Below the pieces are notes generated by a model. That model saw only the letters and a program-made list of their open reading frames with translations, made no database searches and was not told where the DNA came from. DNA of 63,888 bases, counting the filler, from Octopus bimaculoides (Eukaryota): assembly GCF_001194135.2 (NCBI RefSeq). It is 7 parts of 7 records of this genome, joined end to end, with 100 filler letters (N's around TTAATTAATTAA, not from the genome) between each part and the next. Parts side by side here need not be neighbours in the genome. Positions count along the whole stretch, not along the records: positions 41,592 to 47,887 come from NC_068985.1; 6 more parts are not named here. One strand, 5' to 3'. A program made the translations under genes and the position numbers. Each line of letters opens with the position of its first letter. The first letter of the stretch is position 1. Below, piece by piece: positions 9,281 through 48,142 of the stretch.

Positions 9281-10214
9281 TAACTTGTGGGGTCTATGAA
9301 AGGAAAGTATTATATCACTCAAAACGTATACAACAAGGGCTAACAATAAGTCTAAAAACAAACATGGACGTTTAGCATAAACTAATGAAAATACTTTATA
9401 CCAGAAAAGGGATAAAATTCCTCAGAAGGAGTATATGTCTGTCTACTAATTGCATGGATAATCTCAGTTATTTGAAACTTTTTCAGATTTCTATATTACT
9501 GCTTCTGTTTAGTATGCAGAACACACCAGTACGATATTTCTTTCAGCCATCTTGGTAAGATATTATTGGTTTCTTCTTGTCGCTGCTGTTGTTGTTTTTG
9601 ATGATTGTGGTGATGTTGTTACTGTTGTTGTCGCGCGACATAATATTTGTTTTCTCCTTTCCAGTCTAGAAGTCAATTATTGAAGATTGTTCGATTAAAT
9701 ATTGATATTTGCCTCAATATTACACCTCAATATTGCTTTCTCTTTCGTAATATAGAGTGAAAGCGAGCTGGTAAATAGTTTGATATCCACTGAGATATTT
9801 GCCCGGTAATATTTCAATATTTACCAAGTCAAATGAATTACAAATGTATGTAATCTTTCCATATGAACAGTAATTGCATTAATTATGAAAATAACGAAAA
9901 CACACACACGTACACGCATACACACGTACGCGCAAAAATTCTTACCGTAGGCAAGGGAGATATATACCTATTATTTACTAAAATGATAAGTATAATCTAA
10001 CAATGGAATCCGATTGAAATGGAAGCCTGAACACATAATACATGGAAGACATCTGCAAAAAAATAGGGCCAGATATGAAGTAGATAAGGGACTGTCATAG
10101 AAGCACAACTTTCGGCAATATTAATGTTCTTCGTTTTAATAAATCAAAAGTTTGGTCATGTGTTTGCGTTATCTGTCTTTATGTGTAGAAATATTTCTGG
10201 TTAACAAGTTCATT

Positions 10215-41591: not shown

Positions 41592-41672
<81 letters not shown>

Positions 41673-41796
41673 CATGCACATATGTACATACATGACAAAC
41701 ACAGATGCACTCACACATATCAACATACAGTACATGCATATACATATACACGCACATATACTTACACACACGCACACACACATACATACAGAAATG

Positions 41797-42140
41797 TGAA
41801 GGTGCGCTCCTAGCGGTTAGAGTGTTGCACTTATGATGGCAAGATCGTGGTTTCGAAACCCTGACCAGATAATGCTTTGTGTTCTTGAGCAATTCGCTTC
41901 ATTTCGCGCTGCTCTGTGATCATTCCGACACCTGACGTGTGGCACGCCGTGCACCTGTACAGGTAATATCGATTTGATCGAGTGAGTTCATGTACAACAT
42001 AAACATTTGATCATTATAAGCAAATCTATGCCGGTTGTTCAACACGAAATCACGAAACCCTCATCTATCATCTGCGACACGTGTCTGTGGAGTGCTCAGC
42101 CACTTGCATTTTGATTTCATGAGCAGGCTGTTCTTTTGAT
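41797..42140 (+). mobile_element. tRNA-derived SINE family C
   Basis: A-box-like CTAGCGGTTAGAG, B-box-like GGTTTCGAAACC, core TGTGTTCTTGAGCAA shared with 44695-45030. Confidence 0.65.
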
Positions 42141-42167
42141 CAGATCTACTGGAGCTCTCGTCTTCGA

Positions 42168-42198
<31 letters not shown>

Positions 42199-42219
42199 TG
42201 TGTGTGTATGTGTGTGAGT

Positions 42220-42372
42220 GCGGGAGTAGCTGTGGTAAGGAGCTTGCTTCCCGACAACGTTTCCGGTTTCAGTACCAGAGCGAGGAACCTTTGGCAAGTG
42301 CCTTCTACTATAACCTCAGTCCGACCAAAGCCTTTTGAGTATATTTGGTAGATGGAAACTGAAAGAATCCTG
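42220..42372 (+). mobile_element. SINE family B 5' half
   Basis: Head plus CORE-like block plus GGAAACTGAAAGAA. Confidence 0.75.
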
Positions 42373-42404
42373 TCTTATATATGTATACACACACATATAT
42401 ATAT

Positions 42405-42850
42405 ATAGTTATCGTCAAGTCAACATGGTAGTCCAAAAAATAGGACGAATGATGCCATTGATTAGCTCCAAGAGGCAATCACCTCTAGCTAGCTATGTGA
42501 CACACGAACCTGTGTCCATTATAACCTTCGAACAGGGGAGGTCAGCCGTTTCCCCTTGCTGGTCTGTCATCTACAGACTAGTTTCGGGATATTGCCCCTT
42601 ATCAATGTAGAGCAGCCCAACCCAGCAGGCGTCGCTACTGACCGTCTGTACGAAGGATTATTTACCTAATTCAGTGGAATATATCCACTGGTTTTCAGAA
42701 ATAGAGATTTTAGTATTTCTAAGGCTCTCTAAAGGAGACTACGGCAGCAGTACTGGATATTGATAGTTATCGCCAAGCCAACATGGCAGTCCAAAAAATA
42801 GGACGAATGCTGCCGTTCATTAGCTCCAAGAGCCCATCGCCTCTAGCTAG
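42405..42850 (-). mobile_element. Retrozyme-like unit: 358-nt monomer plus 88-nt terminal redundancy, homologous to 2218-2608
   Basis: 42405-42492 and 42763-42850 are direct repeats with 9 differences. A 33-nt block matches 2467-2499 at 26 of 33 positions. HHR inside. Confidence 0.7.
42570..42611 (-). ncRNA. Type I hammerhead motif, core inactivated (C3U, G8A)
   Basis: Minus strand TCTACA-TTGATAA-GGGG-CAATA-TCCC-GAAAC-TA-GTC-TGTAGA. Confidence 0.75.
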
Positions 42851-42999
42851 ATTTCAAGTGAAACACATTCACTGATCTACAAAATTAGAAATATTACATT
42901 TCTAAATCTCTGAGAGAGAGAAATCAGTAAATGTATTTCACCTGAAATCTATATGTTTTCAAAGGTGAATAAGCGTCGACAGCTAGCAAGCCATGCTAC

Positions 43000-43042
43000 T
43001 CCAGACTGATGATGAGCAATGACTCTGAAAGTAGTCTCTGGA
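43000..43042 (+). ncRNA. Type I hammerhead motif, intact CUGAUGA/GAAA core, two stem mismatches
   Basis: TCCAGA-CTGATGA-TGAG-CAATGA-CTCT-GAAA-G-TA-GTC-TCTGGA. Confidence 0.75.
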
Positions 43043-44694
43043 TGCTGGTTTTGATGGGNNNNNNNNNNNNNNNNNNNNNNNNNNNNNNNNNNNNNNNNNN
43101 NNNNNNNNNNNNNNNNNNNNNNNNNNNNNNNNNNNNNNNNNNNNNNNNNNNNNNNNNNNNNNNNNNNNNNNNNNNNNNNNNNNNNNNNNNNNNNNNNNNN
43201 NNNNNNNNNNNNNNNNNNNNNNNNNNNNNNNNNNNNNNNNNNNNNNNNNNNNNNNNNNNNNNNNNNNNNNNNNNNNNNNNNNNNNNNNNNNNNNNNNNNN
43301 NNNNNNNNNNNNNNNNNNNNNNNNNNNNNNNNNNNNNNNNNNNNNNNNNNNNNNNNNNNNNNNNNTATTTATAAAATTAATCTAATTTTTGTATCTCTAT
43401 GGATTCATACTTAGCTTATATATAACTATACTGGTATATTCACTACTAATAAAAAAAAAACTGCTTAGATCATAATTTTATTAATATATAATTAGCATGT
43501 TCCTTTACCTCAATGCTCCTTATTAATACCGCTATGTACCAATTAATCAATATTCACAGATACCATCTGATGAGTTAGTATTTAAGTGTACAATATGTAT
43601 AAATATTAAACTATTTCTGGATAAGTTCTTTTCCTCCCTCAATTGTGTTAAAAATTTGGTATATACTCAAAAGTCTTCATAAATTTCTATCCCTTTGTTA
43701 TAACATTCTTCTTAATAATCCTTTGAATAACCCTCTGAGTTAAAGGGACCTCTAATACTAGCCCCCACCGCCAGGCTTCGGGTCCTCTGGACCATGGCTC
43801 TTATTGGCCCATACATACACCTACCTCCGAATATACTCTTGTTGATTTTGTTATCCGAATTAATGATGAACCTCTTTGAATTATCTTTGATTAGCTCATT
43901 TTCGTTTTAATTATACACATTAGCGTTGGTCATGAATGCTTTCAGCTGCTATTCTTTTTACAAATGTCACTTCTTTATATGATTTGGTAGGACGAAGAAC
44001 TAACTATGCTACGCCGATGATCCCTGTGAATGCAGAAGTAGGTTTCCATGGCAGTCATTTGCCTCCAGAACGAATATCAGATGTTCCTCTTCTGTTTGCA
44101 TGTTAATTCTTCGAGAATTATTTTTAAGATCTTGAAATTATTTCTCTTTCTGATTCAGAGCCTCCAATACTAACCGCAAGTTACCTTTTACTATTTTTTG
44201 AATCTGTTTCTATTCTAATAATTTGGTAGCGTTGATATTATGATCTAAATATTGGACAAACTTTTAGGCTACAAAGCGATAGATCTTCTTGCTAGAAATA
44301 GTGGCAACATATTTGTTAAATCACCTATTTTCTTTGATAATACATCCAATATACCCGTATAACAGACGGGATAGTCACGGCTGGAATGCTTTTCAAAGAG
44401 AGCTGTATCAAGGATGATCTAAAGAAACAGCAGCAGCACAGCCACCGCCACCACTGCCAATAGCTACCTCAGCAATAACAACAACAAATAGACCATGGTA
44501 AGATCTATAGCTTGTGTGTTCATGGTTAGGAACTGATAGAACCTCAACTTCATGGAACGCATAAAGGACAGAACTTGCCCTTGAAAAAATTTCGTATCCA
44601 TGATCATCCTCTGCCCGAAACTGCTGCGGGGATTCAACACAACATCGCAAGCTTACAGAGAAACTCAGCTTTATCACATTAGTACCATTATGAA

Positions 44695-45030
44695 GACGCA
44701 TGGATCAGTGGTTAGAGCTTCGGGATCACAATCATGAGCGTGTGAGTTCGATTCTCAGACAGAGCTGTGTGTTGTGTTCTTGAGCAAGATACTTTATTTC
44801 CAGTTGTTCCAGTTCATTCAGTTGTAGAATGAATTGCGACGTCACTAGTGCCAAGCTGTATCGGCCTTTGCCTTTTCCTTAGATAACATCAGTGGCATGG
44901 AGAAGGGAAACCGGTATGCATGGGCGACTGCTAGTCTTCCATAAACAACCTTGCCCGGACTTGTGCCTCGGAGGGTAACTTTCTAGGTGCAATCCCATGA
45001 CTGAAGGGTTGGGGGTCTTCACCCTTTTAC
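44695..45030 (+). mobile_element. tRNA-derived SINE family C
   Basis: CAGTGGTTAGAGC A-box, GAGTTCGATTCT B-box, GTTGTGTTCTTGAGCAAGATAC core. Confidence 0.7.
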
Positions 45031-46082
45031 TGCTATGTATATTAGAAATTTCATATTCTCCCTCTAGCGCCCACGTGCACCTATTGGACTGGGACATTTA
45101 AGAGTTAAGTGTCTTAGTTAAGGACACAATGCGGACTCAAAAACAGAACGAACACAAACCCCTGCATTCTCAGCCTGTTGTTTGTTACCCTTTCTGCAGA
45201 ACCTTTTTCAATTCCAGGATACTTGCATCTTATTATGTCTCACTAATAGGATTTGTCTTTATCCTTACTGCTCCGAACCCAGCGTCACCCAACGCTGACA
45301 TATACGCTGATATATATCTACCGGCACCGTCACGTATCCGCAAGGCTATCACTCATCCCGGCATTCTCAAAGAACCCACCACTCAAATACTTGTACACAT
45401 AGACACTTCATCGGCACACCACCCGACACAACACACCTTCAGGAACTATACCCTCAAGCAGATCCCCTCACAAACCCATGCTCTCTGGCACCTCAGACCA
45501 CAACTATCCCCTGCGGTTCATCACACCCTGGCACCACACCTTGCGGCACAATATCCTCCGGCACCACAGCCCATTCACACACGCATCCCTCAACACACCA
45601 TCCCCCTTGTCCACTGGCCCAAACTCACCCTCCTAATCCCTGCAGATATCGTTATCGATCACGTTTCTCCCATATCGTCTTGCATGAATAACTTTCCAAA
45701 TATTTTCCATCTCAATCACTAGAAATCCTTTTCACTGGAAAACAGTAGAATGTATGTATGTATGTATGTATGTATGTATGTATGTATGTATGTGTGTATG
45801 TGTATGTGTATGTATGTATGTATGTATGAAGATATGTAAATATGTTTGTAAGTATATAAATATCCAAGCCAGTATATATATATACATATACATGAGTGTG
45901 TGTGTGTGTATGCATATATATATGTATGGATGCATGCATGTATGTATACGTGTGTGTATGTACGTGAGTATAAATATATATGCATGTTTGTATCCGTTTC
46001 TTTGAATATATATATACTTATATATATATGTATGTATGTATGTTTATTTGTACATATATTTATAAACACACAAATACACACA

Positions 46083-46140
<58 letters not shown>

Positions 46141-46428
46141 ATATAATGTACAGAAATAGAAATGTAGACAGGCAGGCAGGCAGACAGACAGACAGATAGA
46201 CAGGCAGACATATAGGTAGAAAGATAGATTGATTAATAGATAGGCAGTTAGATGAATAGGGAAGCCAGTAGATAGATAGACAGATAAATAGATAAACAGA
46301 CAGACAGAGAATCGTGTAGATAGACTGACATAATAATGATTGTTAGATACATAAAGGAAAAGAAAGTGAAACTGAAAGTTTGTTAAAAATAGGGAAAGCT
46401 AGAGAAAGAGAAAGAGAGGGAGAGAGAA

Positions 46429-46488
<60 letters not shown>

Positions 46489-46556
46489 TTGGAGTGAGAG
46501 AGAAATAGGACGATGTGAATGATAATAGGGAAGAATGAAGGTATATAAAGGCAGAA

Positions 46557-46597
<41 letters not shown>

Positions 46598-46745
46598 AAG
46601 GAAAGCGAGAGAGATGAAGAGTAGAGGAAAAGAAAGGGTGAGAGGGGAAAGGAAAGAGAGAGAAGTAAAGAAAGTGAAAATATAAGAGTGAAGATGACTG
46701 AGAAATCAGGTAGATAAATAAACATATTCAAATAAAGGACGGATG

Positions 46746-46786
<41 letters not shown>

Positions 46787-46799
46787 ATTTATCTATCTA

Positions 46800-46880
<81 letters not shown>

Positions 46881-46963
46881 TTCTATATCTCTCTGTCATC
46901 TCTTTCGAATACCCATAATTTCTCTTTCTCTCACCCGTCTCTCCCTTTCTTTTTATCTCTGTT

Positions 46964-47011
<48 letters not shown>

Positions 47012-47584
47012 CCTCTTTCTCTTTCTCTCTCTCACACACACATACACAAGGGAATAGATAAACACCAACAGAGATACAGATATGGAAATAGAGGGTAAGT
47101 GAGATGCAGAAAAAAACGAAAATGAAAACAAAAAAAAAATTAAAAAAAGAACACAACAAAACAAAACAGCGCAACAACAACGGTAAAACAAACCAAAATA
47201 TGAAATATTCATTGGACATAAAAGAAATAAACAAAATAAACATGAATATGATAATATAAAATATATAAAATATGTATAAAAAAATATACATCAACGTAAT
47301 AATAAATATATAATGAAACAAATTCAAAAAATCGCAGAAAATAAAAAAAGTATGAAGAATAGGGCTGCATTGTGGTGAAGCTTGTGAAAGTGAAGTTTAG
47401 TTAGAAGGGTGGACAAATACGTTATATAAAGTCTGGCATTGAATAGAGAGAAGTACTCAGAATATATAAGATACCCCTTGATGGGTGGGAAACCTATTCT
47501 ACTTTTTGTTGTTAAATTATATAACATGGCAAAGGCAAATAGACAAGCTGGCAGATACACAAATGGATAGCGTTATATATATAT

Positions 47585-47629
<45 letters not shown>

Positions 47630-47658
47630 TATATATATTTTTGTGTATATATACATAC

Positions 47659-47703
<45 letters not shown>

Positions 47704-47850
47704 TATATATATTTTTGTGTATATATACATACGTGTATATATATATATATATATGGTCTTATGTACATATGCATATATGTATATATAAACACACCTACAT
47801 ATATACATATATTTACATGCATATGTATATCCTTTATTTATATATATATA

Positions 47851-47886
<36 letters not shown>

Positions 47887-48142
47887 TNNNNNNNNNNNNN
47901 NNNNNNNNNNNNNNNNNNNNNNNNNNNNNNNTTAATTAATTAANNNNNNNNNNNNNNNNNNNNNNNNNNNNNNNNNNNNNNNNNNNNGCCAAGAATTGAT
48001 GTGTAAACTCGTCTGTGGCTATTTTTGAAATTACATGTTTTGGACAAGTTTACTCGTTGCACTCTGAAAAAGACAAATTGGGTGAAGACAAGTTAACCCA
48101 TCTTTGCTGGGTAAGGGATTAAGACACAAAGTTGTGGAGTTA

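What the first reader, a model, noticed from the sequence alone, without database searches (positions are those of the whole stretch)
42405..42850. Second member of the same family, circularly permuted, with covarying stems
Seen: 358-nt period and 88-nt redundancy (about 90 percent identical). Hairpin order is collinear with the 2.2-kb unit. AGCTAGCTAGAGGTGATTGCCTCTTGGAGCTAA matches AGCCAGCTGGAGGAGATGTCCTCCTGGGGCTAA at 26 of 33 positions, and the stem changes preserve pairing (G-C to A-U, A-U to U-G). HHR stem I differs entirely in sequence (TCTACA/TGTAGA) yet is fully paired. The unit begins at a different point of the circle than the first copy. Inference: different start points plus terminal redundancy point to a circular RNA template, and covariation points to selection on RNA structure. 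The core here is dead (C3U, G8A), so this is an older insertion.
Basis: partly seen in the sequence, partly recalled or inferred. Interest (0 to 1): 0.8.

Follow-up and report, generated by a model that had tools for sequence, protein, structure and literature searches.

The report
Octopus hammerhead-ribozyme retroelement copy
This 450-base stretch is a slightly-longer-than-one-unit copy of a small non-coding mobile element found in octopus genomes that carries a self-cutting "hammerhead" RNA motif; it is a well-preserved example of an already known kind of element (animal retrozymes), not a new kind.

Summary
The repeat is real: a 358-nt period, with 88-94 nt present twice at 88-90% identity. 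On the minus strand the unit carries one hammerhead-shaped motif (42570-42611) with the canonical animal type-I layout. An equivalent motif appeared in 2 of 20,000 shuffles, and none was as good. These two positions pair with each other, and U3-A8 is a documented natural covariation that is active in vitro. An Octopus vulgaris paralogue shares it and also has a compensated helix I change. The natural 358-nt units fold far better than shuffles (circular MFE z = -5.6, controls within ±1.6). Two relatives were recovered, one from O. vulgaris chromosome OX597823.1 and one from Logan contigs. All three independent loci share one RNA-sense 3' end and differ at the 5' end. That is the fixed-start, 5'-truncated pattern of target-primed reverse transcription, not scattered starts on a circle. 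The redundancy shows the template was longer than one unit, either circular or multimeric; the data cannot tell which. The 2.2-kb comparator lies outside the piece, so the claims resting on it cannot be checked. Verdict: a non-LTR retrozyme / Penelope-associated element, a new member of a known kind, of modest interest.

The parts
42399..42850 (-). The whole insertion, 1.26 units of a 358-nt non-coding element (RNA sense is the minus strand). It may extend to about 42866.
   Evidence: Direct repeat at spacing 358. Identities. The O. vulgaris paralogue covers the equivalent of 42399-42624 at 88%.
42757..42850 (-). Upstream partial unit (A'). This is the 3' part of a preceding unit, 5'-truncated, and it joins head-to-tail to the start of the full unit at 42756.
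   Evidence: The internal junction reads ...CGATAACTATCAATAT|CCAG....
42493..42756 (-). Single-copy body (B) of the complete unit. It contains the ribozyme and several hairpins.
42399..42492 (-). 3'-terminal segment (A) of the complete unit. It ends in ...CGATAACTATNNATAT, an end shared by three independent loci.
   Evidence: Alignment A2. Flanks beyond the shared end are unrelated.
42570..42611 (-). Type-I hammerhead-shaped motif.
- Helix I: 42606-42611 / 42570-42575 (6 bp).
- Core box UUGAUAA: 42599-42605 (U3-A8 variant).
- Helix II plus loop: 42586-42598 (4 bp).
- GAA: 42583-42585.
- Helix III palindrome ACUAGU: 42577-42582.
- C17: 42576, with the predicted cut between 42576 and 42575.
   Evidence: Descriptor scans. 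Shuffle controls gave 7/4000 for the relaxed descriptor and 2/20000 for the exact core, with 0/20000 as good. No Rfam hit. The 2-nt loop is forbidden for a monomeric helix III, and the ACUAGU self-duplex scores -4.8 kcal/mol.
42462..42494 (-). Its second copy, at about 42820-42852, has one broken inner pair.
42372..42398 (.). (TA)n/(CA)n microsatellite abutting the element's RNA-sense 3' end. It is the probable AT-rich target and blurs the exact boundary by about 6 nt.
   Evidence: AT-rich or microsatellite targets are described for Penelope-like elements (PMC8557442, PMC11167929).
42848..42951 (.). Neighbouring 104-nt foldback with a 31-bp stem, starting at the last bases of the element. It is absent from the relatives, so it is probably not part of the family unit.
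   Evidence: Self-inverted BLAST hit, E = 3e-9. MFE -49.3 kcal/mol, z = -8.6. No match in L001-L005.

Best explanation
This is a genomic cDNA copy of a small (358-nt), non-coding, hammerhead-bearing retroelement of octopus genomes. It belongs to the animal 'non-LTR retrozyme' / Penelope-like-element-dependent kind.

Shown:
- The locus holds one complete unit preceded by the last ~94 nt of another unit.
- The unit carries one canonical-architecture type-I hammerhead whose C3-G8 pair is replaced by U3-A8.
- The unit RNA is exceptionally self-paired.
- Independent insertions share one RNA-sense 3' end and are truncated to different extents at the 5' end.

Inferred mechanism: source arrays are transcribed as multimers. 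Hammerheads cut them to unit length, working in pairs through the palindromic helix III because a single motif cannot close that helix. Unit RNAs are circularised by a host ligase. A reverse transcriptase supplied in trans, most plausibly from a Penelope-like element, starts cDNA at a fixed internal site about 177 nt downstream of the ribozyme cut, on a nicked AT-rich target. Here it ran on for 1.26 units, over either a circle or an uncut multimer, before stopping.

With only one ribozyme, this particular locus cannot itself release a unit-length RNA.
For: - Repeat geometry.
- Hammerhead motif: helix I 6 bp, helix II 4 bp, helix III 2 bp with a 2-nt palindromic loop. This is the 'canonical metazoan type-I' layout described in PMC4209133.
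- Shuffle controls for the motif: 2/20000, with 0/20000 as good.
- U3-A8 is a known natural and active covariation (PMC3088659, PMC4209133).
- The O. vulgaris paralogue shares the same UUGAUAA box and has a compensated helix I change, A-U to G-C.
- Circular MFE z = -5.6/-5.0 and -3.65/-3.5 for the two natural units, against -1.6 to +1.6 in 20 control windows.
- No coding capacity.
- GC is 44-46% and the unit is 358 nt. Mussel retrozymes are 350-390 bp, with GC below 45% (PMC7229834).
- Three loci share one fixed end and have variable 5' ends of about 165, 227 and 452 nt.
- There is no poly(A) tail.
- Partial tandems, 5' truncation, internal initiation of reverse transcription and AT-rich or microsatellite targets are all described for Penelope-like elements (PMC8557442, PMC11167929, bioRxiv 10.64898/2026.07.22.740005).
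Against: - Rfam's hammerhead models give no hit, even at E<=10.
- Only one ribozyme and 1.26 units are present, so the locus fails the 'two consecutive HHR units' working definition of an active retrozyme (bioRxiv 10.64898/2026.07.22.740005).
- No array of this family was seen, because only three loci could be collected.
- No target-site duplication is recognisable.
- No Penelope-like reverse transcriptase from the same genome was available to link to it.
- No expression or cleavage data are available.
- The sequences in hand show almost no covariation outside helix I.
Confidence: 0.65

Rival explanations
1. The locus is a circularly permuted copy of a circular RNA, started at an arbitrary point of the circle, with an inactivated ribozyme that marks an old insertion.
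For: The terminal redundancy and the high self-pairing fit a circle. The copy ends do not coincide with the ribozyme cut, so the template was not a cleaved linear monomer.
Against: Three independent loci share the same end, so the start is not arbitrary. U3-A8 is a compensated pair shared by a paralogue, not decay (PMC3088659, PMC4209133). A multimeric linear template gives the same product.
Confidence: 0.12
2. The locus is a remnant of a DNA-level tandem array (satellite) that expanded by unequal exchange and was later cut down to 1.26 units by deletion. No reverse transcription of a longer-than-unit template would then be needed at this locus.
For: Animal hammerhead repeats do occur as arrays ranging from dimers to long multimers (PMC7229834). 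An assembly gap lies 200 nt away (43059-43365), and arrays are often collapsed in assemblies. The two redundant segments are no closer to each other (88.3%) than one of them is to the O. vulgaris paralogue (89.4%).
Against: The left end of the locus coincides with the end shared by two dispersed, non-tandem copies elsewhere. That is expected for an insertion end, not for a random deletion breakpoint. The sequence between the element and the gap is unrelated to the unit.
Confidence: 0.13
3. It is the terminal (pseudo-LTR) fragment of an autonomous Penelope-like element rather than a separate non-autonomous family.
For: Penelope-like elements carry hammerheads in their pseudo-LTRs, form partial tandems and are mostly 5'-truncated (PMC4209133, PMC8557442). 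The U3-A8 variant was first seen in such elements.
Against: The head-to-tail junction recurs after only 358 nt, leaving no room for a reading frame. Nearby ORFs have no Pfam domain. The ribozyme has the canonical layout (helix I 6 bp, helix II 4 bp), not the 'minimal' layout with a long helix II and a short helix I typical of metazoan Penelope-like elements (PMC4209133).
Confidence: 0.08
4. It is a chance local duplication with a chance hammerhead-like string and has no RNA biology.
For: Rfam finds no ribozyme. The motif was first found with a descriptor written after seeing the sequence.
Against: Shuffles give 0-2 hits in 20000. The motif is kept, with a compensated helix I change, in a paralogue from O. 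vulgaris. The family is dispersed. The fold z of -5.6 is far outside the controls.
Confidence: 0.02

Closest known systems
Non-LTR retrozymes of invertebrates, e.g. Mytilus galloprovincialis (Cervera & de la Pena 2020, PMC7229834)
   Same: Both have a unit of about 350-390 bp, a type-I hammerhead, head-to-tail copies, moderate to low GC, no LTR/PBS/PPT and no reading frame. Both have a highly self-paired unit RNA and a mollusc host.
   Different: Only 1.26 units and one ribozyme are present at this locus, and no array of the family has been seen yet. The core carries U3-A8. Expression as circRNA has not been examined. No sequence similarity to the mussel elements was tested, because no comparator was held by the tools.
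Hammerheads of Penelope-like elements, including the U3-A8 variant of Schistosoma mansoni Cercyon elements (Cervera & de la Pena 2014, PMC4209133)
   Same: Both show the U3-A8 covariation of the C3-G8 pair, a helix III reduced to a short palindrome that implies action as a dimer, and mostly solitary, 5'-truncated genomic copies.
   Different: Those are 'minimal' motifs with helix II of 7-8 bp and helix I of 4-5 bp, sitting in the pseudo-LTRs of coding elements about 3 kb long. This one has the canonical 6-bp / 4-bp layout in a 358-nt non-coding unit.
Penelope-like element insertion mechanics (Craig et al. 2021, PMC8557442; Frangieh et al. 2024, PMC11167929; Li et al. 2026, bioRxiv 10.64898/2026.07.22.740005)
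   Same: Shared features are a partial tandem with a truncated upstream copy, frequent 5' truncation, an element end set by internal initiation of reverse transcription rather than by an RNA end, and AT-rich or microsatellite targets.
   Different: No reverse transcriptase / GIY-YIG gene is present here or was linked to the family. The 30-40-bp 'tail' signature could not be assessed from three copies.
Newt/axolotl satellite 2 and Schistosoma Sm-alpha hammerhead repeats (as reviewed in PMC4209133 and PMC7229834)
   Same: All are type-I hammerheads with an unstable helix III that work as dimers in multimeric transcripts, with units of about 330-350 nt.
   Different: The phyla are unrelated, and no sequence similarity is claimed or was tested. 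Sm-alpha is SINE-like, whereas no tRNA-like head is evident in this unit.
Plant LTR retrozymes (PMC4918200)
   Same: Both are non-autonomous retroelements whose hammerheads excise a unit RNA that circularises.
   Different: The plant elements have type-III hammerheads inside real LTRs, a PBS and PPT, 600-1000-nt circles, GC above 55%, and are mobilised by Ty3/Gypsy elements. None of these features is present here.

Membership tests
Hammerhead ribozyme, type I | Conserved core (C3 U4 G5 A6 N7 G8 A9 ... G12 A13 A14 ... A15.1-U16.1, H17) | tested here: met
   All positions are canonical except 3 and 8, which change together to U-A. U3-A8 is a documented natural covariation that is active in vitro (PMC3088659, PMC4209133).
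Hammerhead ribozyme, type I | Three helices around the core, with helix I open | tested here: met
   Helix I is 6 bp, helix II 4 bp (one G-U), and helix III 2 bp plus a 2-nt loop forming the palindrome ACUAGU. Helix I shows one compensated change in the O. vulgaris copy.
Hammerhead ribozyme, type I | Match to the curated covariance models (Rfam Hammerhead_1 and relatives) | tested here: not met
   No hammerhead family was reported at E<=10 on 481 nt or on the 6.3-kb piece.
Hammerhead ribozyme, type I | Self-cleavage at the predicted site | not testable with these tools
   No biochemical or RNA-end data are available. The predicted site is between 42576 and 42575 on the minus strand.
Metazoan non-LTR retrozyme | Short head-to-tail repeat of 150-450 bp carrying a type-I hammerhead | tested here: met
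   The period is 358 nt and 1.26 copies are present. The motif lies inside the unit.
Metazoan non-LTR retrozyme | [quoted passage not shown] | tested here: not met
   The locus has one hammerhead only, because the duplicated segment does not include it. The locus is a copy, not a source.
Metazoan non-LTR retrozyme | No LTR/PBS/PPT and no coding capacity, with low GC | tested here: met
   The longest stop-free frame is 76 aa and has no Pfam match. GC is 0.44-0.46, at the upper edge of the '<45%' described in PMC7229834.
Metazoan non-LTR retrozyme | Unit RNA highly self-paired and present as circRNA | tested here: inconclusive
   The predicted circular fold has z = -5.6 and 61% of bases paired, against controls within ±1.6. 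Expression and circularity were not testable.
Metazoan non-LTR retrozyme | Multi-copy family in the genome | tested here: met
   Independent copies occur in O. vulgaris OX597823.1 (L001, 88% identity) and in Logan contigs from four runs (L002-L005, 71% identity). Copy number is unknown.
Penelope-like element (autonomous) | Reverse transcriptase plus GIY-YIG endonuclease reading frame | tested here: not met
   The unit recurs after 358 nt. No Pfam domain was found in the element or in neighbouring ORFs.
Penelope-like-element-dependent non-autonomous element | Partial tandem (pseudo-LTR-like) structure, a fixed 3' end and variable 5' truncation | tested here: met
   The layout is A'-B-A. Three loci share the 3' end, with lengths of about 165, 227 and 452 nt.
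Penelope-like-element-dependent non-autonomous element | Sequence relationship to the pseudo-LTR of a Penelope-like element in the same genome | not testable with these tools
   No cephalopod Penelope-like element sequence could be fetched. Such elements are reported in cephalopods (PMC8557442).

The most novel reading that the evidence does not exclude
Octopuses may carry a still-active retrozyme lineage with two features. First, its canonical-architecture type-I hammerhead works with a U3-A8 core. Second, its circular RNA is copied by a reverse transcriptase that starts at one fixed internal site almost diametrically opposite the ribozyme cut (177 versus 181 nt). Longer-than-unit copies such as this one would then be direct footprints of rolling-circle reverse transcription.
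Probability: 0.3. Interest if true: 0.5.

Novelty: new member of a known kind. Interest (0 to 1): 0.33.

Why it matters
The finding adds cephalopods to the hosts of hammerhead-bearing small retroelements. It also gives a clean natural example of the U3-A8 core variant in a canonical, non-minimal animal hammerhead. The correction has a practical side. Scans that treat C3U/G8A as 'dead', and covariance models that miss the variant, will under-count such ribozymes. The fixed 3' end, which lies away from the ribozyme cut site, is a small piece of descriptive evidence that these elements are copied from an internal initiation site, as recently shown for Penelope-like elements. Beyond that, the locus is an ordinary decaying repeat copy.

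Tried and rejected
- **Rfam.** Searches on the piece and on the 481-nt region found no ribozyme family. The only hits were spurious microsatellite 'miRNA' matches. Rfam on L001 found nothing at gathering threshold.
- **Exact and degenerate DNA patterns.** Two patterns were tried, a 22-mer and a 28-nt IUPAC hairpin pattern, across metagenome, viral and prokaryote-genome collections. There were no matches, as expected for an animal repeat.
- **Word-indexed protein search.** Two element frames and a three-sequence alignment found nothing. Only the exhaustive representative search worked.
- **Exact look-up of two window ORFs**, tried to locate the source contig. Neither is on record.
- **Pfam** on neighbouring ORFs and the element ORF found nothing.
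- **tRNA search** found none.
- **A second ribozyme on the plus strand** was not found.
- **Continuation of the array or an inverted partial copy** in the right flank was not found.
- **Covariation between the two in-locus copies and the relatives.** There was no both-sided change in the duplicated region, so the sequences in hand support no statistical claim of structure selection there.
- **Homology of the flanks beyond the shared 3' end** to the unit start is absent in two loci and ambiguous (6/12) in L001.
- **Pol III A/B boxes** were looked for by eye and rejected: only partial matches, wrongly spaced.
- **Identity of the SRR11869384-91 samples** could not be established.

Full report
**Setting.** The piece (41592-47887) is animal-type DNA. 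It is dense in microsatellites, holds an assembly gap at 43059-43365, has no tRNA gene and has no ORF with a Pfam domain. A 157-nt dispersed repeat just upstream of the finding (42231-42387) matches two places in an Octopus vulgaris chromosome at 80% identity. The only relatives of the element itself come from O. vulgaris and from unidentified Logan read assemblies. GCA_951406725 is the O. vulgaris reference assembly. The source is therefore an octopus or a close relative; the exact species was not established.

**The observation.** The repeat finder reports 42399-42492 and 42757-42850 as a 94-nt direct repeat at 88% identity, spaced 358 nt apart. A gapped extension to 42866 is possible but adds no net score. 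BLAST of the piece against itself gives E = 2e-29 for the repeat and finds no further copy. The minus strand contains TCTACA-UUGAUAA-GGGG-CAAUA-UCCC-GAA-ACUAGU-C-UGUAGA at 42611..42570. The comparator 33-mer and the '2.2-kb unit' are not in the window I was given. On the quoted strings alone, the count of 26/33 is right, and three both-sided compensated pairs are far more than random substitution would give (about 6e-5). I cannot vouch that the comparator exists.

**Is the hammerhead real?** Rfam does not report it, even at E<=10 on 481 nt.
- A descriptor for type-I hammerheads allowing two core mismatches finds exactly one hit in the whole piece, this one. Motifs as good occur in 7 of 4000 dinucleotide shuffles.
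- A stricter descriptor requires an exact core with either C3-G8 or U3-A8. It again finds this motif alone. Only 2 of 20,000 shuffles contain any such motif and none is as good.
- The architecture is helix I of 6 bp, helix II of 4 bp, and helix III of 2 bp capped by a 2-nt loop that makes the palindrome ACUAGU. This is what Cervera & de la Pena describe as the canonical metazoan type-I hammerhead (PMC4209133).
- A 2-nt hairpin loop is sterically forbidden, so a single motif cannot close helix III. Two motifs can form a 6-bp intermolecular helix III. This is the dimer mode described for newt, axolotl and Penelope-like-element hammerheads (PMC4209133, PMC7229834).

**The 'dead core'.** Perreault et al. 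report that C3 and G8 covary to U3 and A8 in several natural hammerheads, and that such variants had already been shown to be active in vitro (PMC3088659). Cervera & de la Pena found about 1,300 U3-A8 motifs in Schistosoma (PMC4209133). Every other core position here is canonical. The O. vulgaris paralogue has the same UUGAUAA box and a compensated A-U to G-C change in helix I. U3-A8 is therefore a trait of the family rather than decay of this copy. The O. vulgaris copy does carry two further substitutions in the second core box, as expected for a truncated, neutrally drifting copy. The inference 'dead, therefore older' fails. The only age indicator is the roughly 10% divergence between the duplicated segments. 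Even that is weak, because one of them is as close to the O. vulgaris paralogue (89.4%) as to its partner (88.3%).

- Unit 42493-42850: MFE -123.3 kcal/mol with z = -5.6 on the minus strand, and z = -5.0 on the plus strand.
- Unit 42405-42762: z = -3.65 and -3.5.
- No shuffle out of 100 reached the observed energy in any of these four cases.
- Twenty control folds of equal-sized windows elsewhere in the piece gave z between -1.6 and +1.6.

The unit is therefore unusually self-paired, as described for retrozyme RNAs (PMC7229834). Because hairpins are palindromic at the DNA level, this does not identify the strand. The strand assignment rests on the ribozyme.

Pattern scans of the metagenome, viral and prokaryote collections found nothing. 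The exhaustive protein search with the longest stop-free frame of the element found two proteins.
- One is CAI9729092.1, a 'hypothetical predicted protein' of O. vulgaris whose first 53 residues are a translation of a copy of this element. Its locus is L001 on OX597823.1, and the copy lies at 9950-10176. It is 88% identical to window 42399-42624, and its flanks are unrelated to the window's.
- The other leads to four near-identical Logan contigs, L002-L005. They carry a copy 71% identical to 42396-42563.

Aligned in RNA sense, all copies end with ...CGATAA(C/A)TATNNATAT and then diverge into unrelated flank. The window's internal junction shows what follows in the next unit (CCAG...), and the flanks do not match that. 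Only L001 is ambiguous, at 6 of 12. The other ends differ. The Logan copy stops just 3' of the ribozyme at about 165 nt. The O. vulgaris copy stops 13 nt 5' of it at about 227 nt. The window copy runs 452 nt or more, which is past a full unit.

This pattern of one fixed end plus graded 5' truncation is that of target-primed reverse transcription. The fixed end is not the ribozyme cut. The cut lies between 42576 and 42575, 177 nt from the 3' end and 181 nt from the unit start, so the two distances add up to 358. The template of the window copy was therefore neither a cleaved linear monomer nor primed at an RNA 3' end. It was longer than one unit, either a circle or an uncleaved multimer, and was copied from an internal site. 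Internal initiation, partial tandems, 5' truncation and AT-rich or (TA)n targets are all documented for Penelope-like elements (PMC11167929, PMC8557442). [quoted passage not shown] The window copy abuts a (TA)n/(CA)n tract at its 3' end.

**Covariation.** Among the two in-locus copies and the two relatives, RNAalifold finds 25 pairs in the duplicated region and none with a both-sided change. Several differences between the two in-locus copies break pairs in one copy or the other. The single clear compensated change is in helix I of the ribozyme. This is what one expects from a handful of dead genomic copies. It neither supports nor refutes selection on the living RNA.

**Classification.** The locus meets these features of a metazoan non-LTR retrozyme: unit size, a type-I hammerhead, head-to-tail arrangement, no coding capacity or LTR features, a self-paired RNA and a dispersed family. 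It fails the working criterion for an active locus, which is two consecutive ribozymes. It is not an autonomous Penelope-like element. I file it as a new member of a known kind, in a host group (cephalopods) for which I found no description of retrozymes in the searchable literature. That is an absence in that library only.

**Limits.** The analysis rests on three loci and has no expression data. An assembly gap lies 200 nt from the element.

Noticed in passing
window 42848-42951: A 104-nt near-perfect foldback (31-bp stem, MFE -49.3 kcal/mol, z = -8.6) starts at the last three bases of the element. Its first ~19 nt may be the element's own 5' extension. It is absent from the O. vulgaris and Logan relatives. 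It could be a MITE-like foldback or a snap-back product made at the 5' junction.
   Followed up: partly
window 42231-42387: A dispersed repeat ending in the microsatellite next to the element. It is about 80% identical to two places in the O. vulgaris locus (L001 4961-5119 and 10989-11146), looks SINE-like and points to an octopus source.
   Followed up: partly
window 41795-41935 and 44690-44830: Two tRNA-like heads followed by a shared core (TTGTGTTCTTGAGCAA), with 77% column identity. They are probably two members of a tRNA-derived SINE family. ARAGORN and Rfam call no tRNA.
   Followed up: partly
L001 18399-18429 (minus strand), O. vulgaris OX597823.1: A second hammerhead-shaped motif with a fully canonical CUGAUGA...GAAA core (helix I 6 bp with a G-U, helix II 3 bp, helix III 2 bp), 8 kb from the relic copy. 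It is not in a tandem repeat and is below Rfam thresholds. It may be a chance match or a relic of another hammerhead family.
   Followed up: partly
L001 10001-10534: The annotated O. vulgaris protein CAI9729092.1 (177 aa, 'hypothetical predicted protein') begins inside a truncated copy of this non-coding element and runs on into a SINE-like repeat. It is probably an annotation artefact.
   Followed up: partly
window 43059-43365: A run of 307 N, an assembly gap, lies 200 nt from the element. Tandem arrays are often collapsed at such gaps, so the true copy number at this locus is uncertain.
   Followed up: no
window 41592-41800, 45750-47050, 47570-47887: Long compound microsatellites, (TA)n, (TG)n, (ATGT)n, (AG)n and (TCTA)n, produce dozens of sub-threshold Rfam 'miRNA' hits (mir-297, mir-5014, mir-466 and others). 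These are composition artefacts.
   Followed up: yes
window 45129-45722: A 197-aa ORF rich in His, Pro and Thr, lying in a CA/CC-rich stretch, has no Pfam match. It is probably not a gene.
   Followed up: partly
The search for homologous proteins versus search of protein representatives: The word-indexed search missed P0001 although it shares many 5-residue words with the query and is the representative of its own cluster. Negative results from that tool are therefore weak for short repeat-derived ORFs.
   Followed up: no
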